Assembly: GCA_038087875.1 (NCBI GenBank)
Contig: CM075977.1
Span: forward strand, 240,932,001 to 240,996,000
DNA length: 64,000 nucleotides
Origin: Malacoraja senta
Lineage: Eukaryota
Reading direction: 5' to 3'
Positions 17,663-58,350 of this stretch are shown here, in pieces. Every line of letters starts with the position of its first letter. Within the stretch, counting starts at the first letter, position 1. The position numbers and the translations under genes were made by a program. The notes below the pieces were generated by a model. It was not told where the DNA came from, did no database searches, and saw only the letters and a list, made by a program, of their open reading frames with translations.

Positions 17663-17902
17663 GCTAATGGTAATACCATTTTCACTTTCTATACTCCGTG
17701 TTTGTGTCAAACGAACTTCAAAATGCCATCTATGCATGAATACTAAAATACGAACTATATGTATGTTTGCATGTGTGTGTAAAAGAGAGAGTGTGAGATA
17801 GATATTTGCATGAGATCATTGTTGCTCATATTTTATAAAGGTTAATAAAAACAGAGGATGGGAATGCTGATTTATAGGGTACTAACTATTGTATATAGTA
17901 CC

Positions 17903-20389
17903 CAATCTATACATATAGATTGGGTGAATCAAATTGGAAGGGGTGCTGAGGAAGAGGATTTCTTGGAATGTATGCGGGATAGTTATCTAAATCAACATGT
18001 AGAGGAACCAACGAGAGAGCAGGCTATTTTAGACTGGGTATTGAGTAATGAGGAAGGGTTAGTTAGCAGTCTTGTTGTACGTGCCCCCTTGGGCAAGAGT
18101 GACCATAATATGTTTGAGTTCTTCATTAGGATGGAGAGTGACATTGTTAATTCAGAAACAATGCTTCTGAACTTAAAGAAAGGTAACTTTGAGGGTATGA
18201 GACGTGAATTGGCCAAGATTGACTGGCAATTAATTCTAAAAGGGTTGACGGTGGATATGCAATGGAAGACATCTAAAGACTGCATGGATGAACTACAAAA
18301 ATTGTTCATCCCAGTTTGGCAAAAGAATAAATCAGGGAAGGTAGTGCATCCGTGGATAACAAGGGAAATCAGGGATGGTATCAAAGCGAAGGATGATGCG
18401 TACAAATTAGCCAGAAAAAGCAGCATATCGGAGGACTGGGAGAAATTCAGAGACCAGCAGAGGAGGACAAAGGGCTTAATTAGGAAAGGAAAAATAGATT
18501 ATGAAAGAAAACTGGCAGGGAACATAAAAACTGACTGCAAAAGTTTTTATAGATATGTGAAAAGAAAGAGATTAGTTAAAACAAATGTAGGTCCCTTGCA
18601 GTCAGAAACAGGTGAGTTGATCACGAGGAACAAGGATATGGCGGACCAATTGAATAACTACTTTGGTTCCATCTTCACTAAGGAAGACATAAATAATCTG
18701 CCGGAAATAGCAGGGGACCGCGGGTCAAAGGAGTTGGAGGAATTGGGTGAAATCCAGGTTAGTCGGGAAGTGGTGTTGGGTAAATTGAATGGATTAAAGG
18801 CCGATAAATCCCCAGGGCCAGATAGGCTGCATCCCAGAGTACTTAAGGAAGTAGCTCCAGAAATAGTGGATGCATTAGTAATAATCTTTCAAAACTCTTT
18901 AGATTCTGGAGTAGTTCCTGAGGATTGGCGGGTAGCAAATGTAACCCCACTTTTTAAGAAGGGAGGGAGAGAGAAAATGGGAAATTACAGACCAGTTAGT
19001 CTAACGTCGGTAGTGGGGAAACTGCTAGTCAGTTATTAAAGATGGGATAGCAGCACATTTGGAAAGTGGTGAAATCATTGGACAAAGTCAGCATGGATTT
19101 ACGAAAGGTAAATCATGTCTGACGAATCTTATAGAATTTTTCGAGGATGTAACTAGTAGCGTGGATAGGGGAGAACCAGTGGATGTGGTGTATCTGGACT
19201 TCCAGAAGGCTTTTGACAAGGTCCCACATAAGAGATTAGTATACAAACTTAAAGCACATGGCATTGGGGGTTCAGTATTGATGTGGATAGAGAACTGGCT
19301 GGCAAACAGGAAGCAAAGAGTAGGAGTAAACGGGTCCTTTTCACAATGGCAGGCAGTGACTAGTGGAGTACCGCAAGGCTCGGTGCTGGGACCCCAGCTA
19401 TTTACAATATATATTAATGATCTGGATGAGGGAATTGAAGGCAATATCTCCAAGTTTGCGGATGACACTAAGCTGGGGGCAGTGTTAGCTGTGAGGAGGA
19501 TGCTAGGAGACTGCAAGGTGACTTGGATAGGCTGGGTGAGTGGGCAAATGTTTGGCAGATGCAGTATAATGTGGATAAATGTGAGGTTATCCATTTTGGT
19601 GGCAAAAACAGGAAAGCAGACTATTATCTTAATGGTGGCCGACTAGGAAAAGGGGAGATGCAGCGAGACCTGGGTGTCATGGTACACCAGTCATTGAAAG
19701 TAGGCATGCAGGTGCAGCAGGCAGTGAAGAAAGCGAATGGTATGTTAGCTTTCATAGCAAAAGGATTTGAGTATAGGAGCAGGGAGGTTCTACTGCAGTT
19801 GTACAGGGTCTTGGTGGGACCACACCTGGAGTATTGCATACAGTTTTGGTCTCCAAATCTGAGGAAGGACATTATTGCCATAGAGTGCAGAGAAGGTTCA
19901 CCAGACTGATTCCTGGGATGTCAGGACTGTCTTATGAAGAAAGACTGGATAGACTTGATTTATACTCTCTAGAATTTAGGAGATTGAGAGGGGATCTTAT
20001 AGAAACTTACAAAATTCTTAAGGGGTTGGACAGGCTAGATGCAGGAAGATTGCTCCCGATGTTGGGGAAGTCCAGGGCAAGGGGTCACAGCTTAAGAATA
20101 AGGGGGAAATCCTTTAAAACCGAGATGAGAAGAACTTTTTTCACACAGAGAGTGGTGAATCTCTGGAACTCTCTGCCACAGAGGGTAGTCGAGGCCAGTT
20201 CATTGGCTATATTTAAGAGGGAGTTAGATGTGGCCCTTGTGGCTAAAGGGATCAGAGGGTATAGAGAGAAGGCAGGTACGGGATACTGAGTTGGATGATC
20301 AGCCATGATCATATTGAATGGCGGTGCAGGTTCGAAGGGCCGAATGGCCTACTCCTGCACCTAATTTCTATGTTTCTATGTTTCTATGT
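17903..20389 (+). mobile_element. CR1 LINE, 5'-truncated, young (end of endonuclease domain plus complete RT; three frameshifts)
   Basis: ORFs 17858-19039, 19059-19646, 19523-19909 and 19834-20289 join into CR1 ORF2 ([47 protein letters not shown]). Ends in a (TTTCTATG)3 tail. Confidence 0.96.
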
Positions 20390-31865: not shown

Positions 31866-34346
31866 ATGACCTTCCTATTCTTTTTGCTTTGCATCCTGAT
31901 CGATCGCGTTGCCTGTCAGATCCGCTATTCCGTTCCCGAGGAGCAGGAACATGGCACGTTCGTGGGGAATATCGCCGAGGATTTGGGCTTGGACGTGACC
32001 AAGCTGGCGGCCCGCAGGTTCCAGACGGTACCGAGCTCCCGGACCCCGCACTTGGAGGTGAACCTGGAGAACGGGGTGCTCTTCGTCAACGAGAAGATCG
32101 ACCGCGAGCAGATCTGTAAGCAGAGCCCCAGCTGCCTGCTGCACATCGAGGTCTTCCTGGAGAACCCGCTGGAACTTTTCCGTGTGGAGATTGAGATCGT
32201 GGATATTAACGACAACCCGCCGAATTTCCCGGAGGCGGACATCACGGTGGAGATATCGGAGAGCGCCAGTGCTGGCACTCGGCTGCCGCTGGAGAGCGCG
32301 TTCGACCCGGACGTGGGCACCAACTCGCTCCGCACCTACGAGATCACCCCCAATAGCTACTTTTACCTCGACGTGCAGACCCAAGGAGACGGCAACAAGT
32401 TCGCCGAGCTGGTGTTGGAGAAGAACCTGGACCGGGAGCAGCAGGCTCTCCACCGCTATGTGCTGACGGCAGTGGACGGGGGGATGCCCCAGCGCACCGG
32501 CACCGCACTGCTCAGCATCAAGGTACTGGACTCCAACGACAACGTGCCCGTCTTCGAGCAGTCCGTCTACACGGTGAGCCTGCCCGAAAACGCGCCCGTC
32601 GGCACCCTAGTCATTCAGCTCAACGCTACCGACCGCGACGAAGGCCAAAACGGCGAGGTGGTGTACTCGTTCAGCAACCACGTCTCGCTCAGGGTGAAGG
32701 AACTGTTCAGCATCGAGCCCAGGACTGGCTGGATCGAGGTGAAGGGGGCCATCGATTACGAGGAGAGCAGCCTGTACCAGCTGTTCGTCCAAGCGAAGGA
32801 CCTGGGACCCAACGCGGTGCCGGCTCACTGCAAAGTGCTGGTGAAAGTTACCGACGTGAACGACAACGCGCCGGAGATCAGTTTCAGCACCGTTTCCGAC
32901 TCTGTGAACGAGAGCGCAACCTTGGGCACGGTGGTCGCCTTGCTGAGTGTCACCGACCGCGACTCGGGTGACAACGGGCAGCTCCAGTGCGAGATCTTAG
33001 GGCAGGTGCCTTTCAAATTGAAGCCCTCCTTCAAGAATTACTACACCATCGTGACCGACGGGCCGCTGGACCGAGAGATCACCGACTCGTACACTGTGAC
33101 CATCATGGCGAAGGACCGGGGGTCGCCCCCTCTGGCGTCCAGCAAGTCCATCAAGGTGCAAGTGGCGGACGAGAACGATAATGCACCCCGCTTCTCCCGA
33201 TCTTCCTACGACGTGCACGTTTCAGAGAACAATGTTCCAGGGGCTTATATTTACGCAGTGACTGCCGTAGACCCCGACTTGGGGCAGAACGCGTACATCT
33301 CTTACTCCATATTAGAGTGCGATATACAGGGTATGTCGGTCTTTACCTACGTTTCCATAAACTCCGAGAATGGCTATCTGTACGCCTTGCGCTCTTTCGA
33401 CTACGAGCAGCTGAAGGAGTTCAGTTTCACGGTGCAGGCCAGGGACGCAGGAAACCCTCCTCTAATCAGTAACACCACCATCAACATCATCATAGTGGAC
33501 CAGAACGACAACGCGCCGTCTATCGTATCGCCCGTGTCGAGGAACGGCAGCGCCAAAGAGATGGTGCCCCGCTCGGCTGAGCCGGGCTACCTGGTAGCCA
33601 GACTGGTGGCAGTGGACGCGGACGATGGTGACAACGCTCGGCTTACCTATTACATCGCCAAGGGCAACGAGCTGGGTCTCTTCAGGATGGACTGGAGGAG
33701 TGGAGAGCTCAAGACCGTCAGGAGGTTACCCGCCAACAAGAAGGCCCCCAGCGCCCCGTACGAGCTCCTGATCGAGGTCAGGGACCATGGACAACCGCCC
33801 CTGTCAGCCACGGCCACCATCCTCGTGGTTGTAGTGGACAGTCCCGTGGACCGACAGGGTGAACGGGGCAACCGAGCTGGTAGCCCGAAGGAAAACTCGC
33901 TGGATTTGACACTGATCTTGATTATCGCCCTGGGCTCGGTGTCTTTCGTCTTCCTACTGGCCATGATCGTGCTGGCCATCCGCTGCCAGAAGGACAAAAA
34001 GGTGAACATCTACAGCTGCTTGGCCAGCGAGTGTTGCGCCTGCTGCCGCCAGGCGAGGAACAGGAAGAAGAAGCTCAGCAAGTCGGACATCATGCTGGTG
34101 CAGACCACCAACACCAACGCGGCTCAGGTGTCGGTGGAGGAAGGGGGCTTTGGACATCATAGTCAGAATTACTGTTACCAAGTTTGCCTGACTCCAGAAT
34201 CGGCCAAAACAGATCTCATGTTCTTGAAACCGTGTAGCCCGGTCAGGAGTACAGACGGTGAACACAACCCCTGCGGGGCAATTATTACAGGGTACACCGA
34301 CCAGCAGCCTGACATCATTTCCAATGGGAGTATATTATCAAACGAG
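31866..34346 (+). CDS. PCDH10: Protocadherin-10 exon 1 (signal peptide, 6 cadherin repeats, TM, proximal cytoplasmic tail; 827 codons)
   Basis: Close match to remembered vertebrate PCDH10 (EEQEHGTFVGNIAEDLGLD, LDLTLILIIALGSVSF, QNYCYQVCLTPESAKTDLMFLKPC, PDIISNGSILSNE). ATG at 31866 precedes a signal peptide. Donor GAG|GTAAGG, phase 0. Confidence 0.98.
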
Positions 34347-35171
34347 GTAAGGCGTCTACCGCATCTACTCTACATCGCAAGATAACCCCCCACCACTCCC
34401 ACTAATTGTGGCCACCTCACCCCTTCCCATCCTACTTTTCATGCACTCCTAAACTGTATTTCCTCCCCCAAGCTCATAAATCTAGATCTGCTAACTTAGC
34501 TTTTCTCAGCTGAAAGCCGTGTGAGGTTATTTTCGGATGCCGCGCTGTCTTTAGAGCAAGGACGGGCGTCATAATGTGAAATGTTGTAAATGCAGCCAAA
34601 CGGCACCAATTGTCTTCTGTGATTTGATTAAATAATCCGTGACTTCCGGCACCAGATTAGAGAGTAAAAAAGGAATGACTTTTTAATGTAATTTGTCGAC
34701 CAGTAAACTAAAGACATTATCTAGTTATTAACTATCGGAGAACTGAAACGTTTTTTTTTACATTATTGTCCAATCTTAACACCTCTCTGGATATCAAGTC
34801 CTTAAGACTTTCAGACATATTGTACCAGATGAAACGACAGAGGTACAAGAAATCACTAAGCAATCACAGGGGCCACAGGTCTAAAATATTGTTTTAATGT
34901 TCAGTTTATTTAAATTACCATGTGGTTTGAACTTGATTCAGCCTCGTTCCTTCGCCACTTGGGGCTGAGAACTATTTTCAGCTCTGAAATTGTATGGTCA
35001 TTATGAGCTCCAATGTTTTTATATGAGCAATGGTAATTAAGTTTTTGAATCTCTGTGACTTCTGCAACTAAAACTCTGGTCCGATTCCTTCCTAATATTT
35101 GCCCACAGAATGATACATTTATCTGCATGTTCTGTCACGATTGTTGACGCGATGTTTTATCCCTCCTTCAG

Positions 35172-35230
35172 ACAAAACACCAGCGGACCGAACTCAATTT
35201 TCTTGTGGACAGACCCCGCCGAGTTAACAG
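35172..35230 (+). CDS. PCDH10: Protocadherin-10 exon 2 (59 nt)
   Basis: ccttcag|ACAAAACAC...AACAG|gtaaga encodes TKHQRTELNFLVDRPRRVN(S), matching PCDH10 TKHQRAELSYLVDRPRRVN. Confidence 0.96.
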
Positions 35231-35346: not shown

Positions 35347-35453
35347 TTCTGCTTTCCAGGAAGCGGATATCGTGAGTTCAAAGGACAGTGGTCACGGTGA
35401 CAGCGAACAAGGCGACAGTGACCACGATGCTACCAACCGAGCTCACAACTCTG
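35347..35453 (+). CDS. PCDH10: Protocadherin-10 exon 3 (107 nt, CM1 motif)
   Basis: tttcag|TTCT...CTG|gtaagt encodes SAFQEADIVSSKDSGHGDSEQGDSDHDATNRAHNS. Confidence 0.97.
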
Positions 35454-37789
35454 GTAAGTCTGCTAAAATAATGTTCCAATTTGTTTTTTCCCTAACCGTG
35501 TTTGAGAGAGTGGGGGAAAGCGAAAGAAATCCATACCTTTTGAACACTGAATAGAAAATGTAATACGATACGGACGCCTTCGGTTTACTGTTTTGTTTTA
35601 GTAGCGAGCTATAGTGTTTAATTCACGCTTCCTTTTGTCTATGTTGGATGTCTCAGTAATTCGCCAAACTGTTCAAATACGTGAACAAATGGGCTTGTCA
35701 GCGCAGAATGCACATGTGGTAGGATTCAATTAAGAATACTGTGCAGTAAACTCGGGGGTTCGAATTTCACCTCACGGTGTGGTGTTTCATGCAAATTATT
35801 GTTGAGTCATGGGCTTTGAACGAATTGTGTGATGTGCTGTTGAGTTAGATGGTACAAGGGGCGTGACATTATTTAGCGCTCAACGTGTTACGGTGAATCC
35901 TGTTTCTTTGTAATGTATCCCGTGTACAAGCTGCCCTTGAACAAAGTTTAATTCCCCCTCTTCTTTCTGGTCATGGATTGGTTTCATCCGACCCATGCGC
36001 TACTGTTCATTATGGAAAACACGTTTGACACTAGCAGTCGCTCAATGGCTCCTTTATTTATCCTGTTGTTGATGAATATGCCTTCTTAAACGAAACCTAG
36101 CACTGGCATTTATGTCCATCATTGTTGGATGTGTTGGAATTTGGAAAGAAATGATAGAAGTGTCAGGGAATTTATAAGTGAACAAAGCAGAAGGCTTTGT
36201 CAGATGTTTGAACATCTGTTATTGCCGAAGGGATTAAACAACCCTTGTTCCACTTCATATAGTTCACAACCTCCTGATTGAAAGATTGACAAACTTTGTG
36301 GTCTGAATAGTTGTGATCGTGTTGTTGCTGAAAGTGTTTTTCTTTTGTACATCGTCCTTTTTCTCTTTCAAAATGGAGGGTTATTAAATACACCGACACC
36401 ACAGAAGATGGCAGTAATGCAAAGCTTTACAGCATTCATGCTCTTTGTAGTAAGGAAATTACAATTCTAAGGTTAACATAACTCTCAACTATACCGAGTA
36501 TCATTTAGAATTAGGAATAAAAACGGTTGCAGAAGAAAATGAGGTACAAATAATGTAACCCGGGGAGTGAGTCAGATGCCAATGTCCATCAGCGACCAAA
36601 ATTTAATCCCAGCAGTAATAAAAATGACAAAACTTTGAAATACTTAAGTGACCTTCATTAGATTGGCAAGTGTTTCTGGAAATCAGATCAACGTTGACTG
36701 TAACCGGATTAAGGGAGTAGAAAACTGTTTTATTTAGCAGGAGACAGTTTGGATCATATACGTTTATTTCGCAACAATTTCAAATCTGCGTGTTTCAATG
36801 TCTTAACTGTGTAAATGTCGAAACGTTGAATATCTGGAACCGATTTACAGCATCGCCCCTTTAGATTGATAGACGACCTAAATGGCACTGGGATGTTGGA
36901 CTCGTGTCTATAGCTAGCTTGCTTGAAAACATGGGATCTTCTGCTGTACACGTCCCAATCTATGTCCCTTTATCTTCCAATGACGAAGTGCTCAGGGACA
37001 AAAATTTCCATCCAATGTAATGCAAATATTTTGGAAAAGTGTATATATTCTTGGTGTTATTGCGATTATCTGATGCGATTTATGGTATTTCTTGCTTAAG
37101 TTTCTTTCATAGTCCTCATTTCTGCATTATATTGATCCTTAGTACTGTTATAAGAATTTACAGAAACACATTCTATCAAGTGACCTTGGATATTTAAATG
37201 TTGGTGCCAAACCATCCACTGAAATGCAACGTTGTGCATTTGCATTTGAGAAAAACCTATGCAAGCCACCATCAGGCAAAATGGGAAGATTAGACTAGAT
37301 CAATAGATTTGTTAAATATATGAGCTTTACTTTGATACAAAGTGAAAAAAAATTGGAAAGGTCCATTGCAGAATTATTTTGTGTTTTTATTTTTAAATTT
37401 CCAGCGTCAGCACGTTTTTGACAGTTTTATTGTGTGTCGGTAAAGTATTTGAGGTGAGAAATCTAGTGTGTTGGATCTTCGAAGAACCCATCGCCAAAGG
37501 TGAGGCAAAGGAAAGGGTAGGGATGGGTGGATGCAGGAGCCAAGAGACGCAATGGGTATTGGTTACGACAGTACGTGCAACAGAAGTGGGTCAACTACAG
37601 CACACCAAGTTATAGAACATACCCAACGTAGTTAATACGAATTAAAAAATACAACGTTTGCAGTGGAATGAAAATAGTTTTATTTGCCAAGTTCACAGAA
37701 GCCAAATTCCCCAATTACCGTTTGAACTAATTCTCATGCATTTGATTACTTACTCATAGTAACTTTTCAATTTTTGTTGCCAAACAAAG

Positions 37790-38703: not shown

Positions 38704-40829
38704 ATGGTGCCTGAACAGAAGGGAAGGGTAGGGTGGGGGGTGGGGGGGGGGGGGGGTGGCGACGACTAAAGTATGTGGCATTTGGGTAAAATGGATGAGA
38801 AAGCTTACTGAATTCCAGATCCCTGAAAGAAAGGTGCGTTAAATCTTTACGCGCGTCTTTGCTTTGATGTCTGTCACAAGCTATCGTTGCTGGATTATTG
38901 ACCTGTGAAGGGCAAATCTTAATATATCGAGATCATTAAATGTATTATTAATTTAAATATATAAAGATATCAGGATATATATCGCATGTCAACTTTGAAA
39001 TAAAGATGAAATAAACGAGCCCTAAATGTAATTGGGTCCGAAAGCAAGAACCGATATCAAATGGGGCATAACATTATGGTTAACCAACCCGGAAGTGACA
39101 AGACTTGATCTACTGGTTAATTTATGTGAATGTTCTGAGCTGGTTAATCAAAAATCTGGAAGGCAAAACACGAAAAAATACAAAGCCCACTGGACAACTG
39201 TGAACCAAAAAAAAAAGGTTTGAGGAACCAGGCAACAGAACAGAATGCACTCCTTTCAAAGCTATTCAGAGGCACACTCACATATAGTACAGACAGTGCT
39301 GAGCAGACTAGAGAGTGCACCCAACCCCCAACGCCACCCCCGCCGACTGCAATTGCCTATCAGAGCAGAAAATTGTGTTTATTTATTTTAGAAGTCAGTA
39401 GGCATTTGTCAACTTTACAAATTGCAGCGAAAAGAGGCCAGGATTGCGAAAAGACTGCGTTGCAGCGATTGACTAGCAGTCGGCTTTTGCAGGGTAAACA
39501 TAAGCCAACTTGGAACAGTTTTAGTAAATGTCACCGTGCCTGAGCGTTCCATTTTAAATACCAGCCCGACGTCGACTTGCTTTACATTGTTTGACTAGCT
39601 CTGAAATAAAATTCAAAATCAAATGACTGGAGATTCCCCAGTCCCCGCCAAAACCGTGCACGTCGACAGTCTTTTCGTTTCCCATTAAAGGATTCGCGCC
39701 TGGCGATCCGGTTTCCAGTTCACGTCCGCAGTCTGCAACAGTCCACTGATCAGTAATTTGCTTTCAGACCTCTGCATAGCAATTACTGATGTGGGGCTGT
39801 GATCGAAGCGTTGCATTTGCATCGCACGAGCTTCTTTAATTTAACATATATAAAAAGTCATTTTGAAGCAAGATTAATCTACGATAAGAGCCCCAACGTT
39901 TCCTTTCCTCGGCGCGTTACGACCTCACACTAGTTAGGCAAACACGCCGGCAAAGATGAAAAGAATCGGGCCTCGTGATGTTCCCGGCTGGTTTAACACT
40001 GCGGGTGCATTGCAAATAGTGTGTGAATTCTCCTATATTCTTCTATACTCGGTTTCTTCCTTCAGAACTTCTGAGTCCCAGTATTGCCACTGATCTGGTT
40101 CCCACTCCACTAAACAACTGCATCAGTGCAAAGGCATTTGGCCACGCAGACATTTGAAGGCTTTATATGTCAATTTGGTATAAATTAGATGCTTTCTGAC
40201 CTTTGCTGTCTTGTTGTTTTCTGCTACACCATGAAATTGATTGGCATCTTGTACAGATCCCCATTTCAAGTTAAAATGTGCCATGTGTACCAGTGTGGGT
40301 TTAATCCGCATATGCATGTACATGTGTGACATACTAAAGTGAAAAGGCTGAATGCTCTTTCAGCTTTCACTTTATCCAAATGGATTAGGCTCTGCAAATA
40401 TTGGCAAGCCGTTGTCTCTGGGTTGGCCACCAAAACCAGACGCACAAAGACGGCCTTCAAGAGCAAGTCATAACCTGGATGATTTGGTTACTCGCCCTTT
40501 TGGCACCCAAAACACAGGGATAGAAGGAGCTTGACAGAATGCCCTTCATTTACTCCAAGAAAACATGCACTTTGGAGAAAAAAGTAGCTTAGTAACATTC
40601 AAGCAGATGATTGCGACTCCATCTACCGCAATACGCATTAATTCCCTCTGCCGCTATTCATCAAGACTATCATGTGTACTATGTACAAAATGGGGCCAGT
40701 GTAGGTTGCTTTGAAAACAACTCCAAAACTAGGACTTCTACCACCAATAAAGGAAGCAGCTGCACAGGAAAATCACCAACTCTGGGTTCACCTCTAAGTC
40801 ACACTCTTTCCTGACTTGGTAATATATGT

Positions 40830-42759: not shown

Positions 42760-45700
42760 AAATCAATTTAAGGACATTACTACATAAAATCATAGTTTGT
42801 GCCTTTTTTGACGCACCATACATTCTGGACTTCTGGATTGAATTCTGCAAAATAATTATCACTAATTAACATGCAATATAAAGTAATACAGTCTGAAAGA
42901 GTTAGCTAATAATATTTATTTTTAAGAATTATAAGGATTTTAAGAATTTCTTTCTATACTGTTCTTAAATGTGGTATTTTATAATTGGAAAAGTATGCTT
43001 AATTTTACTTTAACGATTTTATATATTAATTTTAAAACCTCAACGCTTTGTTACTGGGCTGCAGATTTATATGCTTTTTTCATTAAAGCAAATGTCCCTT
43101 ATTACATCCTTAAATACAACAGGGCTTCACTGATATTAATAGCCAGGGGGAGCTTAGCAACAATGAAAACAAATAGCAGAGCTGGTTTTGCTTTTTTATC
43201 CCACAAGGGTGCTTTGATTCTCCTTCTTCTTCTTTATTATTATTTTCCTTTTTCTCCTGATTTATTTATTTTTCTTCTGCAGAGGAGGTACTAAGTCATA
43301 TACGGTAGATGTTGTGAACAACTACACTTTGAATATAAACATGCCATCCATATTTGAAGTGTGGAAATTGTGCTGGTACAAATTGTGGGACAATCTCATC
43401 CAGTATTGCTAATGTGATAAAAATCACACCAGTCCATTCCATGTAGCCAAATAAATGTTCTAATTGGCCAGTCCATTTTGTTGAGCTAATGATGCTATTC
43501 TGGATTTTCTTTGTATTTTCTTTAATTGCTGTGCTGACTGAATCCAAACAGCCTCTTTGTCAATGGTATAAATGTACTTTCCTTGAATGAGAAAGGAAGG
43601 AGTGATAAAGAAATAGTGATAATTTTTGTTGAATTTGGAGCATAATGTTGTCAGTCTGTAAATGAAAAATTATGTTAACCGAGAAGTGTAGATGGAAGAA
43701 TTGTGTACAGCATTATATACTGATCAATACATTACAGACAGAATGTCACACAAGATAAAATAATCACTATATTTCTATTGGGAATGCATGTTCTTAAAAG
43801 TTCATGTTGATTTGGGTCTTGAATGTTTCTGGTTCAGATGGTATTGTGGAATGATGCAGACCCAGTGTTCATTGTTATTTTGAGCTGCATTCATTGGATA
43901 AAACAGAACTGTCTATACTAACCAGTATCAGAAGCTAAATAGCAGAGCTCTCTCCAAGACAAAGTCTACTGCTCGCTCATTAATTTCCCAGACTTTAGGC
44001 CACATTCATACATCTACCATTAGATTACTTTACATATATTTTTGCCATGGGCAAACAGCAGTCATAGACTTGCTATCCACTTCTGTTGAAGTATGCAAAT
44101 AGTTTGAGATGAAAAATGATTAAAGAGAATAATTCCCCCCCCCCCCAGCCCCCCCTCCACCCCCCTCCCCCCACACCCCCCCCCCACCCCCACATATGTG
44201 CAGACGGCCAGTTTGTGACAGGACTGTTGAGACATTGGCAATGGTATATTTCCAAAAATGACACTCAAATTTCATTCATTTTTGTATTTGGTTTGTATTT
44301 GGCCCTCCATATTTGTTTTCCCACAGGAATTTCAGGTATACTATTCTTTAATCAGTGACTTTTAGCATTATTCTTGGTGATTTTTTTGTTTTTTAATTTG
44401 ATTCGTGTGGGTTAGTTTCACATGCAGATTTCTCAAATTAAAAAAAAATCTGCTCCAGGTAATGAATTTTGTGTGCAATATTTAACTCCACAATTATATT
44501 CTATGAAATTTGGTAACTTACAAGCTATGTGGTATTACTTTTACTACTTGCCTTTCAGATTATACTTTAGCTATTTTCCCAGACAACTTCCCTTTGTATA
44601 ATACAGATATTTGACCTCTTTGCCTCCATATGATGAACAACTTATTAGTCACACAGAAAGTGTACAATTTATAATTGAAAGGATGCATTCCAGTAACAAA
44701 ACTCTTCGATCTCCAGAGTTGCCTGCTGTCATCTATTTTCCTTGCACCCGTAAGCCATATGGTAGCGTGGCTCAGTTTTCATGGCTTCATTTCTTCATCA
44801 AGCCTTTTTCCTGGTGCCACTGTCCTTGTTTTTGGTGACACGTCTGTGATATCTGAAATAAGGTTGTAAGCGGAGTAAGTGCTTCACCTGCTTCTGTAGG
44901 CATGGAGTTTATTTTTTATTGTGCTTGATAAATCTCTTCAGCAGATGTCCCCAAGGAGAGACGAGGCAGGTTGTAAATAGAGAGCTCGGCTTAATTACAT
45001 GGCTCTAGGCGCTTCAGTTGCATGAGCACTGGTGGTTTGGTGACAGAACCACTTTAGTTGGTGTGAAATTATATTACATACATCTGTTCATTTCCTATAC
45101 TTGTATTAAACTCATAATTTGGCAGGAAAAATGGATCAATGTTATGATCACCCAAGGTGTGATCATTTTTGTTTGACGGCAAACCTTTCTGTAGGTATTG
45201 AATCTTAATCGTAATTTTCATTTCTCATTGTCAGGAGATACCTGATACAGTGTCAAATTGTGTTTTGTTATTATTTTAAAATATTTCTGAATGGCAATTG
45301 CCTGATCATGTAGGTAATCAGAAGTGCTTTTTGACAAGATTTTTCATATTTTAAAATATAGTTTTTGTTATGACATACATTTTTTACTCATTTGGCAAAT
45401 GAGTTAAATTTAATGTGGAAGTGAGGGATTTCACTCTTTGGGAGGGTAAGTGGAGGGCAGTGAAAGAGGGAGAGGTGTCATTGTGGTTAACGTGGTTTAA
45501 TGGTTAATGGTTAAACTTTAATGGTTAAAGTCATTAAATGGTTAAATTGCTTCATAGTAGTTCTTATGCAGACGTGACTTGATAATTTTATCAAGTTCTG
45601 TTTCTTGTAGCTCCAAACTGCTGGAGATCTATTTGACAAAGATCTGCCATGACAATGGAAATATACAGCGGGATACACAAAATGGCGGAATACCTGTATG

Positions 45701-46300
45701 GATGTATATTTTATATCAATATATTCATTTGCTGTCACTTTGTAAATAGATTGTCTATTATTAAAAATGAACTAAGCATGATTCTAGCACTTGGAAAGTG
45801 CACAAAAAACATCTTTATTAGGTCTTTGTACTCCTCTTGGAGTAAATTTCACAGTGAATTACAGCTGAATAACATCAGCATGTTAGAACATTCTGTCACA
45901 GCAACTGCATGCATATCATTGCAATTTCCTTACGTTGTCAGGAAACATCAGTCCCTCCTGTGAAGTCTGTCAATGATACAGTCACCACCAATTTTTAAAA
46001 TCTAAATAAACAAAAACAAATCGAACTGCACCAATAAAGCCACAGAAACACTTACATTGTCTCAAATTTTCTACTTCCATCGTTTTCTCGAAATGCCTTA
46101 AAAGTGAACAATCGTCAAGTCCGATCTACCAGTGAACATATCCGTCTTCTTTGGTTGTGCCTCTGAAGACTTAACTTTAATGAGCATTGATTAGTGAATT
46201 CCACTGTGATTTAAAAAATTTAAATTGATCCCAATAATAAGGTGCCCCCAGTTATTTAAAATGTTCTTTCCATCTTTTTCCTGTCTTTCTCCCCTTGTAG

Positions 46301-46651
46301 GCCGTTCACCGAGATGCATCCTCCTCCATCTGGGGGAGAGCAGGACGGTCCAGGATGCAGACTTCTCCACGACTGCCGTCAATGCAGCTCTGTGAGCGGC
46401 TGGCAGGAGGTGCGATTTGAGAAGGGTGCGTTGGACAATGACACTTCTCCCTCATTCCCCTCCCTCCACACACCTTCCCAGAGAATGGAAACCCTCACTT
46501 CCACATTGCGCTTCCTCTAGGGGTCTGGTCAAGAACTGAGGAAGCTCAACCAACTGAGGCAACTGATTTCGAGTGACAGGCTGTCCTGGGACTCGGAACA
46601 AGTGAAACTTTGGTTGGGGATGAAGCGTGAAAGCTGCTTGAGCGGTCATTG
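46301..46651 (+). other. Candidate alternative/poison exon(s) of PCDH10
   Basis: Very strong polypyrimidine tract plus TAG at 46300, and a second tract plus CAG at 46481. GC-rich island in an AT-rich intron. No transcript evidence is available. Confidence 0.45.
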
Positions 46652-49600
46652 GTATCTATAAAGGACAGCATCACCCTATTTAAACTGAAAGGTTCCTTAC
46701 GGTTTTACAATGGAGTCCTCTTAAGGTTATTTATATCGTCCAAAGGAACGAATATTTTCAAAGGAGTGATTATCCCAACCAAGAGATGCAGAAGAAGCTC
46801 TCACATGACGATCATATTGCTAGCATATAAAATGAAACATTGGTGACTTACAATTCAGGTTGTACACACAGTATTATTAGTGAAACCGTGATACCATTTG
46901 CCAACTACTGGATTTTCTTTTCATCCTTTTTATATTTTTTGCTTGTCCTCTTCAAAATCTCTAATTCCTGCCTATGAATTGAACTACTCTCAGATGCTGA
47001 AGTGGAATTAACTGCTACTGGTGTCTCACCATGCTGGTTACACTGTGTGTGAGCCTTGACTGCAAATAACAGGAGAGAGACTGTTTGAGCATGGGAGGAT
47101 ATCAGACCTGAGACCGATAATGCCCTTTCCTAAAGTTCCCACAACATACCTTACTACTGTTATGGGATAACAATCAATTGAGGAATGCTATCTGATTTAA
47201 TTAACCTTTGAAGCTCAGTTTGCTAATGCCAGTTGGAATGCTCGCTTTGGTCTTCTGATTGAGATAATCTCATTCAGCATTTACCACTCACCAAGAGTCA
47301 AGGCTGGCATTATCTTTGTAAGACACTGGGCAACAGCGTTACCAACTTAGGAAGGAGGAAGTCAACCCATGTGTGACTTTTGTATTCAAAGCAAGCACAG
47401 CTTATACTTGGGAATGGAACAGTTTGATTTTGGGCACTTTATTGTGTTATCACAGATCAAGTTCACCATAATGAAAGGCAAGTGATCACCTTCCAATGTC
47501 ATCAACGGCATGCATTAACTTCAACTTTGAAAAGCAATCACTCATCATCAAATCAAAGCTTTTTTATCTTTTGCATTTCTCTGAATATGATTGCCAAATT
47601 AGTACAGTTTTCTTCTGTGGGTTGTTGCTCACTGTGGATTGTTAGAAGTTGCATACAATAATTGTGTGGATTCTTGCAGCCAGAGTAGTTTTTCTCTCAA
47701 TCTGGGTTGGATTGAACCCAGGTGTCTGGGATGAAGTGCCTATATTTTATGGTCCACACAAACATTGCCTCACCCAGTTCTATGTTGCAACAACAAACCA
47801 AGGGGAAAAAATGTAGTATTAATGGTATCAGATCATTTCATCTCATGAAGAGATACTATTGTGGTCGGATTTTTTGAGTGAGTTGTTCCAAAATATGAAT
47901 ATGATCTATTAAGTGAAACTCCCAATGATTTTTTTTAAATGTTGATTTGTCAATATTATAATAAAAAGATGAGAAAATTCAAGGGAAATCACAAGCGATA
48001 ATTAGTATTAGTCTTATTTAATTAATAAGATATTTGAACACAAACTAGAAAAGTATTGATAATTTTTAGAATTGTATTATTATAGTATTATTAATAATTA
48101 TGACATTTTGTTGCAGTGTTACAATCTGTCATTAGATGCTGTTAGTTCCTTTAGGAATTACAGTGCTATACAATGGTTTTTAAGGGTGCTACAGATACCG
48201 AGTATCAGTTAAAGTTGTTATCAAACTATGAATGTACTGAAGGTCAAAGTCAGAATTCATCTCCAAACCTCTGAAAGATGTGTAGATTTTAGAAAAAGGC
48301 AACAGTTTTAATCTTCAAGAATCTGGAGCAACTAAAACAAAAGCCACTGCATACATTTCCATATGTATTGAAATAAATCCTTCTCTGGAACAGTTATAAG
48401 TTATTATTCATATTTTTATGAATTATATGGGTAAAGTTTTCCATCTATAGTCATTTTTTTTAAATAGCAAATTTATGCATTTTCCACCTCTATGTATAAA
48501 ATGAGTGTACATTTGTAAAATTTGGGTCAAAATGTTTTTGATAGCGAGCAGTGTAATTTGAGAGGAAGCTCCATGTAGGAGCAAACCAGATTTTTTCCGC
48601 TGCATTTTCTTCACTTCTGTTGGTCTAAATTTTTGACAAAGCATAAAGATTTGTTAAGTTCAGGACTGTCAGTGTAAAGTACTGGAACATTAGGCTGAAT
48701 CAATAATATATTAAAGATTTGATGTCTGTGCAGAATTCTTTTAGATTGCTGAATACCACATTTATATTGGAAATGGCTCTTAGAACATAAAATGTTAAAC
48801 TACAGAGTATTATGAAGTAATTATAACATTGAAACTGGTTATTTAAGCTAAAAGGTCTGTGAATGTGTTCACAGTCCACACAAACCTACTTTTTTATCTC
48901 ACCCATAGATTTCCTTATTTTCCCCTTCAAATGTTTACTTTGTCTTCTCTTGAATGTATGTATCCTACTTGTTTTCCATTATATCCTATGGTAGTGATAA
49001 CTGTGTTCTACTAAATCCCTGAGTCAACAGATTTCTTCAACATTCCCAATTGGATATACTGTAAATTTTCTGGACTTGCTGGCGAGTAGGAACACCCTTT
49101 GCAATTCTCCTTTATAAAAACCCCTTCTTATTCTTAAACCTCCAGTGGATCTTCACTCGGTTTTTGAGAGAAGAGTTTTCCTATAACATTATCAACTTCT
49201 TAGTTTCAAAATAATTCTTGTAGTTGTACCGCTTCCCTTGTGGGTGTAATTAAAGAGTGATGAGTTTTCGGTCAGTATTTACTGAAAATATATATGTGAT
49301 AAGGACCAAATGTGCAATTGGAAAATTGGAGCAGGATGTTGTCTCTCCACCCTGGTCCAATTACCAGACATGTCTAACCCTGCTCCATTGAGAAAATGCA
49401 ACTGTTCTTGATTTTCCGTGTACAAAATGACAGGACTTTCATTGTAAAGTACCAAAAGGGAATAGTAAATAGAGTTAAATGTTATTACTGTAATATAACC
49501 AAAGGATATGGTAAATGTTGAGTTAAATAGCCTGTATAAGTTACTATATAGACCAAGGCAGCAAAGGAGGAAGTAACTGTAGGATTACATGTGAGAATTA

Positions 49601-54239: not shown

Positions 54240-54539
54240 GAGCTGACCTCTTTTCCAATTGCACAGAAGAGTGTAAAGCACTGGGACACTCGGACCGCTG
54301 CTGGATGCCCAGCTTTGTACCGACAGATAACCGCCAAGGTCCGGATTATCGTAGTAATTTGCATGTCCCAGGCATGGACTCAGTGCCTGACACTGAGGTC
54401 TATGAAGCTCCAGAACAGCCTGGAGAGAAATCCTTCTCTACATTTGGAAAAGATAAAATGCATCCAGCAAATTTGGAAAAGAAAGAATATGATGCTCTTC
54501 TGCCCAACACACGTGCACCTTACAAGCCACCATATTTAA
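54240..54539 (+). CDS. PCDH10: Protocadherin-10 exon 4 (300 nt; CM2 and WIRS motifs)
   Basis: ctgtag|GA...TTAA|gtgagt encodes (G)ADLFSNCTEECKALGHSDRCWMPSF...KSFSTFGK...TRAPYKPPYL. The phase matches exon 3. Confidence 0.97.
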   Translation, partial: ELTSFPIAQKSVKHWDTRTAAGCPALYRQITAKVRIIVVICMSQAWTQCLTLRSMKLQNSLERNPSLHLEKIKCIQQIWKRKNMMLFCPTHVHLTSHHI

Positions 54540-57619: not shown

Positions 57620-58350
57620 TTGCATGGCCATGGCTCTGTAGCTAACAGAAAGCAGTTATGATAAATCAATCTTTTGGATTTGAAATCATTAATTAGTGGG
57701 TTGCTTGGGATCATTGCTGGGGCTTTAATATTTACAATCAATTTTGATAACTTGGATAGGGGAATCAAGTTTACTGCTGAAACATTTGTCAGTAATATAA
57801 AAATCGAGTGTGAGGAGAACATAGAGACTGAAAAGGTAAAAATAGGTTGAATGAACGTGAGCAAAACTATAAAATCTTGCTTCACAAAGGAATATCGGGA
57901 TCCTAGTGGATGAAACATGTTATTGAGAAGCCGAGTGGAATATTGGCCTTTATTGCAAGGCTAGAGCAGGGAGGTGCTGGTGATGTTGCACCAAGAATTC
58001 TGCATGTATTTTTGTTTCCGTATTTAAGGAAGAATGTGCTTGCGTTGGAGGCATGCAGAGAAGCTTCACCAGATTGATTCCCAGGACGAAGAGGCCAATG
58101 TATGAAGAAAGTTTGAGCCGGATCTCGGTTGAAGAATTATAGGTGATCTTATTGAAAGTTAAATACTGTGGAGAAATGGGAAAATGGATTCTGAGAAGAC
58201 GTTTCCTCTGGAGGGACTATCAAGAAGGAGACATAGTTTCAGGTGGTGATGATGAGGAATTTCATCTGAGACATGAATATTTGGAATTCCTTGTTCTACC
58301 TCCGAAATCTATGGCAGCAGAGTCATTGAATATATTTCATGAGGAAATTG
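57620..58350 (+). mobile_element. Old CR1 RT/3' relic
   Basis: Degenerate ATATTGGCCTTTATTGCAAGG and AGAAGCTTCACCAGATTGATTCCCAGGA, homologous to 19740-19920. Confidence 0.7.

What the first reader, a model, noticed from the sequence alone, without database searches (positions are those of the whole stretch)
46263..46655. Unannotated exon-like island in PCDH10 intron 3: two acceptors, each giving a 31-aa truncating tail
Seen: a GC-rich island that matches no repeat I recognise, preceded by TTCTTTCCATCTTTTTCCTGTCTTTCTCCCCTTGTAG (acceptor 46300). Spliced to exon 3 (phase 1) it gives GRSPRCILLHLGESRTVQDADFSTTAVNAAL* (stop 46393-46395). Possible donors are at 46392 (GTGAGC) and 46410 (GTGCGA). A second pyrimidine tract plus CAG at 46481 gives ENGNPHFHIALPLGVWSRTEEAQPTEATDFE* (stop 46574-46576). 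Both tails are 31 aa and weakly share I.L.LG..SRT...DF. Inference: these are alternative last exons or NMD-triggering poison exons that keep CM1 but drop CM2 and the WAVE-binding WIRS motif, a possible switch for PCDH10 signalling or dosage.
Basis: partly seen in the sequence, partly recalled or inferred. Interest (0 to 1): 0.7.

Follow-up and report, generated by a model that had tools for sequence, protein, structure and literature searches.

The report
Conserved alternative last exon of PCDH10
The GC-rich island is a real alternative last exon of the skate protocadherin-10 gene that gives a shorter protein without the CM2 and WAVE-binding motifs, but NCBI RefSeq already predicts it in eleven sharks and rays, and the proposed second exon is only its 3' untranslated region.

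Summary
The window carries PCDH10 of a skate; the assembled tail-isoform protein is 98.5% identical to the Amblyraja radiata one.

**First acceptor: real.**
- The AG at 46299-46300 is used in a relative. One 2,710-nt RNA contig joins the last 27 nt of exon 3 directly to 46300/46301. It then runs co-linear with the genome for about 2.4 kb, so this is a terminal exon with a long 3'UTR.
- The resulting 31-aa tail is the C-terminus of RefSeq "protocadherin-10 isoform X3/X2" (910-913 aa) in 11 elasmobranchs. It is identical in Rhinoraja longicauda.
- It is therefore not unannotated among relatives.

**Second acceptor, donors and shared motif: not supported.**
- The AG at 46480-46481 is lost in two other species, and that stretch lies inside the contiguous 3'UTR.
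- The donors at 46392 and 46410 are read through in the contig.
- The motif shared by the two tails is at chance level.

**New observation.**
- Between skate and zebra shark the coding part is 96.8% identical, against 80-93% for the constitutive exons.
- None of its 18 four-fold sites differs, against 52% of four-fold sites in exon 1.
- The intron just upstream and the sequence just after the stop are also conserved, so selection acts on the nucleotides and not only on the peptide.

**Distribution and caveats.** The tail was not found in a paddlefish locus or in 230 other PCDH10 proteins. Expression in the window's own species was not shown.

The parts
35172..35230 (+). PCDH10 exon 2 (59 nt)
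   Evidence: Located by exact matching and tblastn.
35347..35453 (+). PCDH10 exon 3. It encodes the CM1 region, ends in phase 1 and has the donor GTAAGT. It is the upstream partner of the alternative last exon.
   Evidence: The 27 loose letters of the X5 contig before 46300 match 35426-35452 with two third-codon-position differences.
46180..46300 (+). Conserved intron just upstream of the alternative exon. It includes the pyrimidine tract 46263-46298 and the acceptor AG at 46299-46300.
   Evidence: 86.8% identical to Stegostoma over 121 nt. The acceptor ranks in the top 3 of 1,098 AGs in the intron by pyrimidine content.
46301..46395 (+). Coding part of the alternative last exon. It gives a 31-aa tail (the first codon is split with exon 3) and the stop TGA at 46393-46395.
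   Evidence: Spliced to exon 3 in the X5 contig. The tail is identical to RefSeq XP_078260761.1 and is found in 11 elasmobranch isoforms. It is 96.8% identical to Stegostoma at the nucleotide level, and 0 of 18 four-fold sites differ.
46396..46632 (+). Proximal 3'UTR of the alternative last exon. It contains both GT 'donors' (46392 and 46410, read through), the second AG (46480-46481) and the second 31-codon frame (46482-46576).
   Evidence: The X5 contig lies on 46300-46632 without a joint. Identity to Stegostoma is 91.8% over 46396-46480 and 78.1% over 46481-46576. The second AG is lost in organism B and in Stegostoma.
46633..48683 (+). Probable distal 3'UTR. The transcript end has not been mapped.
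   Evidence: The same X5 contig continues co-linearly, with pieces at 46787-46838, 47405-47431, 48125-48223 and 48610-48683. The gaps between them are filled by unlike sequence of similar length. AATAAA or ATTAAA occurs at 47960, 48372, 48710 and 49249.
45412..45484 (-). Inverted 73-bp copy of 46435-46507. It is specific to the skate lineage.
   Evidence: 84% identity. Present in Amblyraja and absent from the Stegostoma locus.
54240..54539 (+). PCDH10 exon 4, which carries CM2 and the WIRS-type FSTFGK. The tail isoform skips it.

Best explanation
The island is a 'skipped terminal exon' type of alternative last exon in intron 3 of PCDH10.

**How it works**
- When the strong acceptor at 46300/46301 is joined to exon 3, translation adds 31 residues and stops at 46393-46395. 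The transcript then ends in its own long 3'UTR instead of going on to exon 4.
- The product (913 aa here) keeps the six-cadherin ectodomain, the membrane span, the membrane-proximal cytoplasmic part and exon 3 (CM1).
- It lacks CM2 and the WAVE-complex-binding WIRS motif of exon 4.

**What is shown**
- The junction exists in a relative.
- The same exon is modelled in 11 elasmobranchs.
- The block is conserved between skate and shark.

**What is inferred**
- The isoform is adhesive but uncoupled from the WAVE complex.
- Choosing this exon also lowers output of the long isoforms.
- Because synonymous sites, the upstream intron and the first 85 nt after the stop are all conserved, much of the constraint is on RNA or DNA signals that control exon choice, not on the peptide.

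The second 'exon' is part of this 3'UTR.
For: -: one 2,710-nt contig of run X5 (organism B, depth 20.6) lies on 46300-46632. It carries 27 letters of the end of exon 3 immediately before 46300, shows no joint at 46392, 46410 or 46481, and continues co-linearly to 48683.
- the tail ends 11 RefSeq PCDH10 isoforms (X3 or X2) of skates, an electric ray and sharks, with only four variable positions.
- the window's spliced product is 98.5% identical to Amblyraja isoform X3, and the tail maps to intron 3 in both Amblyraja and Stegostoma.
- coding-part identity to Stegostoma is 96.8%, against 79.8% for exon 1, 93.2% for exon 2 and 86.0% for exon 3 (exon 4 about 89%, from an alignment one base out of register). 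Four-fold sites differ at 0 of 18, against 174 of 336 in exon 1 (P about 2e-6).
- the island is the top-scoring block of intron 3 between skate and shark.
- (PMC9040349): CM1 is encoded by exon 3 and CM2 by exon 4; WIRS binds the WAVE complex.
Against: - No spliced read comes from the window's own species. X23 (polyA RNA, about 6% of the run read, tissue unknown) put no reads on the island. X1 gave only a 224-nt unspliced contig across the acceptor.
- The run with the junction is only guessed to be RNA, although a spliced junction itself argues for cDNA.
- The poly(A) site is not mapped.
- The skate-shark coding differences are 1 synonymous and 2 non-synonymous. There is therefore no sign of selection on the peptide beyond the nucleotide constraint. 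An open frame kept at 97% nucleotide identity is not independent proof that the tail is translated or functional.
Confidence: 0.82

Rival explanations
1. Poison cassette exon. The exon is sometimes spliced onward from the GT at 46392 (a 91-nt insert, which shifts the frame) or at 46410 (a 109-nt insert that carries the stop) to exon 4. That would create an NMD target that tunes PCDH10 dosage. It could coexist with terminal-exon use.
For: Both GTs are conserved in the shark. The nucleotide-level conservation includes synonymous sites and the flanking intron, which is the pattern typical of conserved poison exons.
Against: - The only RNA contig reads through both GTs and continues for 2.4 kb.
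- Everything in 46301-46480 is conserved, so conservation of the GTs is not specific.
- The exon side of the 46392 donor (TCT|GTGAGC) and the +4 position of the 46410 donor (GTGCGA) are poor fits to the donor consensus (consensus from my own knowledge).
Confidence: 0.08
2. The block is primarily a DNA-level conserved non-coding element, such as an enhancer, in the PCDH10 intron. Exon use is a by-product and the tail has no role.
For: - Conservation is as strong at synonymous sites and in non-coding flanks as at replacement sites.
- The coding differences between skate and shark (1 synonymous, 2 non-synonymous) give no sign of selection on the peptide itself.
- Intron 3 holds other blocks conserved with shark and even with paddlefish.
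Against: - The conserved block starts about 120 nt before a top-ranked acceptor and is centred on an exon that is spliced at 20x depth in a relative.
- Gene models in 11 species use it.
- The frame has stayed open with no indel in any of them.
Confidence: 0.07
3. Two separate alternative exons: the second acceptor at 46481 gives a second 31-aa tail.
For: The AG at 46480-46481 follows a pyrimidine-rich tract that ranks in the top 15 of 1,098. The frame is open in skates, and by hand translation of the alignment also in Stegostoma.
Against: - The AG is lost in organism B (46480 A>C) and in Stegostoma.
- The stretch is contiguous with the first part in RNA.
- Identity drops to 78% there.
- Hand-counted substitutions are about 10 non-synonymous to 6 synonymous.
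- No fetched protein has this tail.
- The similarity of the two tails is at chance level.
Confidence: 0.02
4. A fragment of a transposable element that merely looks like an exon.
For: One 73-bp inverted copy of 46435-46507 lies at 45412-45484.
Against: - There is no other copy in the 64-kb window.
- There is no Rfam match.
- The run that holds every sampled word of the island (kind not on record) carries an unbroken 3.6-kb contig across it.
- The island is orthologous and syntenic in the shark, whereas the upstream copy is absent there. The island is therefore the original and the upstream piece is a local duplicate.
Confidence: 0.01

Closest known systems
RefSeq predicted 'protocadherin-10 / -10a / -10-like isoform X3 or X2' of elasmobranchs. 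Examples: XP_078260761.1 Rhinoraja longicauda, XP_032876652.1 Amblyraja radiata, XP_055499314.1 Leucoraja erinacea, XP_069781496.1 Narcine bancroftii, XP_038648439.1 Scyliorhinus canicula, XP_041057258.1 Carcharodon carcharias, XP_048386402.1 Stegostoma tigrinum.
   Same: Same exon, same splice partner and the same 31-aa tail (identical to Rhinoraja; one to three substitutions in the others). It lies at the same place in intron 3.
   Different: Nothing structural: the window's exon is the ortholog. These are automatic models. I found no paper that describes the isoform.
Mammalian PCDH10 short isoform (mouse isoform 1, 896 aa), made by extending exon 1 (PMC9040349)
   Same: A cytoplasmically truncated PCDH10 that lacks CM2 and WIRS and is made by ending the transcript early. 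The window also has the corresponding exon-1 read-through frame (VRRLPHLLYIAR, then a stop).
   Different: The mammalian short form ends inside intron 1 and also lacks CM1. The isoform here includes exons 2-3 (CM1) and ends at a dedicated exon in intron 3. No such form is described for human or mouse in that paper.
Other predicted WIRS-less PCDH10 isoforms: exon 3 joined to the last exon (tail ARKRIC, 888-893 aa, in skates, stingrays, coelacanth and the frog Ascaphus); the 949-aa stingray and manta form; the bony-fish 958/959-aa form ending RGKGFASSFRVDIPETA
   Same: All drop the WIRS-bearing part of exon 4 through alternative 3' processing.
   Different: They use different exons and donors. 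The ARKRIC form re-uses the normal last exon, and the 949- and 958-aa forms keep CM2. None has the tail found here.
Regulated alternative-last-exon choice in neuronal adhesion genes, e.g. SAM68-controlled Pcdh15 (PMC10562862; title and abstract only)
   Same: The choice of a last exon changes the cytoplasmic tail and 3'UTR of a cadherin-superfamily gene.
   Different: A different gene. No regulator has been identified here, and I did not read the paper's text.

Membership tests
Alternative last exon of PCDH10 (elasmobranch RefSeq isoform X3/X2) | The 3' splice site is joined to exon 3 in RNA. | tested here: met
   In the X5 contig, 27 letters of the end of exon 3 abut 46300/46301. This was seen in a relative (organism B), not in the window's own species.
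Alternative last exon of PCDH10 (elasmobranch RefSeq isoform X3/X2) | The in-frame tail is the same as in the annotated isoforms, and it lies at the orthologous place in intron 3. | tested here: met
   The tail is identical to XP_078260761.1. The assembled 913-aa product is 98.5% identical to Amblyraja X3. tblastn places the tail in intron 3 of L001 and L002.
Alternative last exon of PCDH10 (elasmobranch RefSeq isoform X3/X2) | The exon has its own poly(A) site, so the transcript ends there. | tested here: inconclusive
   The contig runs at least 2.6 kb past the acceptor with no further joint. PAS hexamers occur at 47960, 48372, 48710 and 49249. No 3' end was mapped.
Poison (NMD) cassette exon | A downstream 5' splice site is used, joining the exon to exon 4. 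| tested here: inconclusive
   No joint is seen at 46392 or 46410 in the one contig.
Poison (NMD) cassette exon | Nucleotide-level conservation includes synonymous sites and the flanking intron. | tested here: met
   0 of 18 four-fold sites differ, against 52% in exon 1. The upstream 121 nt are 86.8% identical and the 85 nt after the stop are 91.8% identical. This pattern is also compatible with a tightly regulated terminal exon.
Interspersed repeat / transposable-element fragment | Many dispersed copies in the genome. | tested here: not met
   The window holds only one 73-bp inverted copy. The run that holds every sampled word of the island has an unbroken 3.6-kb contig across it. There is a syntenic ortholog in the shark.
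PCDH10 (delta2-protocadherin) gene | Cadherin ectodomain with membrane span in exon 1, followed by CM1, CM2 and WIRS exons. | tested here: met
   The exon-1 protein is 95% identical to Narcine protocadherin-10-like, with Cadherin, Cadherin_2 and Cadherin_C_2 Pfam hits. Exons 2-4 are present with the GHSDRCW and FSTFGK motifs.

The most novel reading that the evidence does not exclude
The island is an elasmobranch-wide, near-ultraconserved RNA switch. Selection acts on the nucleotides (acceptor context, exon body, first 85 nt of the 3'UTR) and not on the 31-aa peptide. Its job would be to end PCDH10 transcripts early in intron 3, setting the ratio of WAVE-coupled to uncoupled protocadherin-10, or simply the dose of the long isoform. 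In skates, a lineage-specific 73-bp inverted copy 950 nt upstream could pair with the 3'UTR in the pre-mRNA and loop out the acceptor, adding a further layer of control.
Probability: 0.25. Interest if true: 0.5.

Novelty: already known. Interest (0 to 1): 0.3.

Why it matters
For annotating this genome, the exon should be called as PCDH10 isoform 'X3'.

Biologically, it shows that cartilaginous fishes keep a CM1-plus, CM2-minus, WIRS-minus form of protocadherin-10. They have done so since the skate-shark split, which I take from memory to be roughly 250-300 million years ago. This form is not among the isoforms described for human and mouse in PMC9040349.

The exon is more conserved at the nucleotide level than the constitutive coding exons. 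That makes it a clean natural case for asking how last-exon choice in a synaptic adhesion gene is controlled, and whether uncoupling from the WAVE complex is a regulated state.

It does not change what is known about protocadherins in general, and the exon itself is already in public gene models.

Tried and rejected
1. **Repeat origin.** Self-BLAST of the island against the window found only the 73-bp inverted copy. Rfam found nothing in the whole window. Rejected.
2. **Earlier notes of the scan.** Nothing was found for this island by sequence, and nothing for protocadherin alternative exons by words. The three notes that fit the place look-up concern other features.
3. **Protein search restricted to the tail** (residues 874-913 of P0123). 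No hit. This says little, because the tail isoforms are hidden inside 90% clusters whose representatives are the long isoforms.
4. **Exact look-up of the 910-913-aa isoforms** to fetch their loci. This failed because only the longest product of a gene is on record. The long isoforms gave DNA for Amblyraja, Stegostoma and Polyodon. Narcine, Scyliorhinus, Carcharodon/Cetorhinus, Hypanus/Hemitrygon and Chiloscyllium returned no DNA.
5. **Paddlefish pcdh10a intron 3.** No tail by tblastn and no island by blastn, although two other short intron-3 blocks do align. Only one of the two paddlefish paralogs was tested.
6. **RNA structure of 46180-46480.** The z-score is -1.1, not notable.
7. **Relatedness of the two tails.** At chance level.
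8. **Simple motif scan** for Rbfox, Nova, PTB, MBNL and STAR-type words conserved with the shark. Only a few YCAY and TAAA-type words turned up, and nothing usable.
9. **Papers.** The Nap1 paper PMC2483522 does not mention isoforms. The review PMC7339444 has nothing specific.
10. **The look-up of sequencing runs.** It was busy twice, worked once, and was closed for the second search. As a result I could not check whether the RNA runs of organism A hold the exon body.
Full report
**Gene context**

The window has no N. A long open frame at 31866-34346 encodes the ectodomain, membrane span and proximal cytoplasmic part of a delta2-protocadherin.

- Its best database matches are protocadherin-10 of elasmobranchs: Narcine bancroftii 95%, Pristiophorus japonicus 93% and Stegostoma tigrinum 86%. 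They carry the Cadherin_2, Cadherin and Cadherin_C_2 Pfam families.
- Exon 2 is 35172-35230. Exon 3 is 35347-35453 and ends in phase 1 with the donor GTAAGT. Exon 4 is 54240-54539 and carries CTEECKALGHSDRCWMP (CM2) and FSTFGK (WIRS type).
- According to PMC9040349, CM1 is encoded by exon 3 and CM2 by exon 4, and WIRS binds the WAVE complex.
- The window's species is a skate. The assembled tail isoform is 98.5% identical to the Amblyraja radiata one. The 5 kb of intron around the island is 96.7% identical to Amblyraja.

**The observation**

All quoted letters, coordinates and translations are correct.

- The island has 54% G+C in a 34-39% surrounding.
- The first acceptor has 16 pyrimidines in the 18 nt before the AG, with no upstream AG. 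Only 3 of the 1,098 AGs in intron 3 do as well, this one among them. The second acceptor is one of 15.
- Short open frames of 31 codons are common, so the frames alone mean little.
- The motif said to be shared by the two tails is not above chance at the protein or the DNA level.

**RNA evidence**

*Which runs hold the island.* One search found runs that hold parts of 46200-46700:
- Four probable RNA runs of organism A hold 0.42-0.54 of the sampled words.
- Twelve probable RNA runs from eight other organisms hold 0.10-0.14.
- Six runs of unrecorded kind hold 0.77-1.00.

*The single read-laying run.* It covered 44250-49250 with runs X1, X23, X17 and X5.

- **X5, the decisive row.** One 2,710-nt contig (depth 20.6) lies on 46300-46632.
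  - The 27 letters that precede 46300 in the contig are the end of exon 3. They match 35426-35452 with two differences, both at third codon positions.
  - The G at 46300 is shared by the end of exon 3 and the acceptor AG. The joint is therefore exactly 35453^46301.
  - The contig shows no joint at 46392, 46410 or 46481.
  - It continues co-linearly to 48683, with matching pieces at 46787-46838, 47405-47431, 48125-48223 and 48610-48683. Unlike stretches of similar length lie between them. About 310 more letters lie beyond 48683.
  - That is the picture of a terminal exon with a 3'UTR of at least 2.6 kb.
  - The contig holds only 27-28 nt of exon 3. That is what a k=31 assembly graph gives at a branch shared with the exon 3-exon 4 path. 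This last point is my inference.
- **X5 differences.** All its listed differences lie at or after 46422 (two more differences are not shown in the table). The first ~120 nt of the exon are therefore essentially identical in organism B, which fits the 0.14 share of words.
- **X1 (organism A).** It gave only a 224-nt unspliced contig across the acceptor (46106-46326, depth 2.8). The tool warns that a filter hides some records, so this says little.
- **X23 (polyA RNA, about 6% read).** It put no reads on the island. Its tissue is unknown.
- **X17.** Its kind is not on record, but it holds every sampled word of the island and has one unbroken contig over 44250-47878. The island is therefore not a high-copy repeat.

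**Annotation in relatives**

The 90%-identity clusters of the top elasmobranch hits contain 910-913-aa members named protocadherin-10 isoform X3 or X2.

- After exon 3 they read GRSPRCILL[H/Q]LGESRTVQD[A/S]DFS[T/M]TA[V/I]NAAL and then end.
- The 11 species are Rhinoraja longicauda (identical tail), Amblyraja radiata, Leucoraja erinacea, Narcine bancroftii, Scyliorhinus canicula, Carcharodon carcharias, Stegostoma tigrinum, Hemiscyllium ocellatum, Rhincodon typus, Chiloscyllium punctatum and Chiloscyllium plagiosum.
- I fetched 241 PCDH10 proteins in all, including those of bichir, gar, bowfin, sturgeon, paddlefish, many teleosts, coelacanth, lungfish and a frog. The tail occurs in these 11 only. 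Other post-exon-3 tails are unrelated, except the recurrent exon 3-to-last-exon form that ends ARKRIC.
- The exon is therefore already modelled in public gene sets for relatives. I found no paper on it.
- For human and mouse, PMC9040349 lists one short form made by extending exon 1. It also lists long forms that differ only in exon 5, 5.1 or 5.2.

**Cross-species DNA**

Loci were obtained for Amblyraja (L001), Stegostoma (L002) and Polyodon pcdh10a (L003).

- The tail maps to intron 3 in L001 (15716-15808) and L002 (16176-16267, after a TTGCAG acceptor).
- Window 46171-46725 aligns to Stegostoma at 82% over 564 bp. This is the top-scoring block of the whole intron.

Identity to Stegostoma by sub-block:

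| Sub-block | Identity |
|---|---|
| 121 nt before the acceptor | 86.8% |
| Coding part plus stop (46301-46395) | 96.8% |
| 46396-46480 | 91.8% |
| 46481-46576 | 78.1% |
| Beyond 46576 | 55-57% |

Identity of the constitutive exons to Stegostoma:

| Exon | Identity |
|---|---|
| Exon 1 | 79.8% |
| Exon 2 | 93.2% |
| Exon 3 | 86.0% |
| Exon 4 | about 89% (alignment one base out of register) |

- Four-fold degenerate sites differ at 174 of 336 positions in exon 1 but at 0 of 18 in the tail exon. Under the exon-1 rate, P is about 2e-6.
- The three coding differences are one synonymous and two non-synonymous.
- The constraint therefore lies on the nucleotides. An open frame kept at 97% identity cannot by itself prove that the peptide matters.
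- The paddlefish locus has neither the tail nor the island, although two other short intron-3 blocks align.

**The second 'exon'**

- The AG at 46480-46481 is CG in organism B (46480 A>C) and CG in Stegostoma.
- The stretch is contiguous with the first part in RNA.
- By hand translation of the alignment, the frame happens to stay open in Stegostoma, with about ten replacement and six silent changes. That is near neutral.
- No fetched protein carries this tail.
- I read this stretch as 3'UTR.

**Inverted copy**

46435-46507 has an 84%-identical inverted copy at 45484-45412. The copy is present in Amblyraja and absent from the shark locus. It is a skate-lineage local duplicate of a piece of the conserved 3'UTR, not a repeat family. 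In the pre-mRNA the two arms could pair and loop out the acceptor and the coding part. This was not tested.

**Mechanism and verdict**

The best-supported reading is an alternative last exon that ends PCDH10 after CM1. It removes CM2 and the WAVE-binding motif and switches the 3'UTR.

- Shown: the junction in a relative, the gene models, the orthology and the conservation.
- Inferred: the functional uncoupling from the WAVE complex, the effect on long-isoform dosage, and RNA-level control as the cause of the synonymous-site constraint.

Rivals:
- A minor poison-exon mode through the conserved GTs cannot be excluded with contigs.
- A purely DNA-level element is less likely, given how the block is centred on a used exon.
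- A repeat origin and a separate second exon are rejected.

The feature is real but is already known from automatic annotation of sister species. The added value here is the junction evidence, the rejection of the second exon, and the unusually strong nucleotide constraint.

Noticed in passing
window 45412-45484 (minus) and 46435-46507: A 73-bp inverted duplicate (84% identity) of part of the conserved 3'UTR lies about 950 nt upstream, in the intron. It is shared with Amblyraja and absent in Stegostoma. In the pre-mRNA it could form a long stem that loops out the alternative exon's acceptor and coding part.
   Followed up: partly
window 58029-58105: Another alternative terminal exon of PCDH10. 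After exon 4 it reads R-RMCLRWRHAEKLHQIDSQDEEANV and then a stop. This matches the end of the 1007-aa isoform X1 of the skates Amblyraja, Leucoraja and Rhinoraja.
   Followed up: partly
window 34347-34388: Reading through the exon-1 donor gives VRRLPHLLYIAR and then a stop. This is the counterpart of the mammalian short isoform made by an extended exon 1 (PMC9040349). Similar read-through products appear among the Logan and ENA proteins of about 847-851 aa.
   Followed up: no
beyond the window's end (Amblyraja L001 68027-68050; Polyodon L003 14048-14065): The normal last exon encodes only ...RKRIC. In Amblyraja it lies about 44 kb downstream of exon 4, so it is outside this window. Predicted isoforms that join exon 3 directly to it (tail ARKRIC) occur in skates, stingrays, coelacanth and the frog Ascaphus. 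This is a second, older way to make a form without CM2 and WIRS.
   Followed up: partly
window 39716-39785 and 36041-36089: Two short intron-3 blocks align to paddlefish pcdh10a intron 3 (80% over 70 nt and 79% over 53 nt). They are candidate deeply conserved non-coding elements, older than the island itself.
   Followed up: no
window 46911-46945: Five to six polyA RNA reads of run X23 match only this ~35-nt stretch. They have four fixed differences and unrelated sequence on both sides. This is probably a short shared repeat piece in some other transcript.
   Followed up: no
window 17858-19646: Two adjacent long open frames (393 and 195 aa) lie upstream of PCDH10, possibly from a retroelement. 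They were not examined.
   Followed up: no
window 44135-44191: A 57-nt C-rich, poly-C-like tract in intron 3.
   Followed up: no
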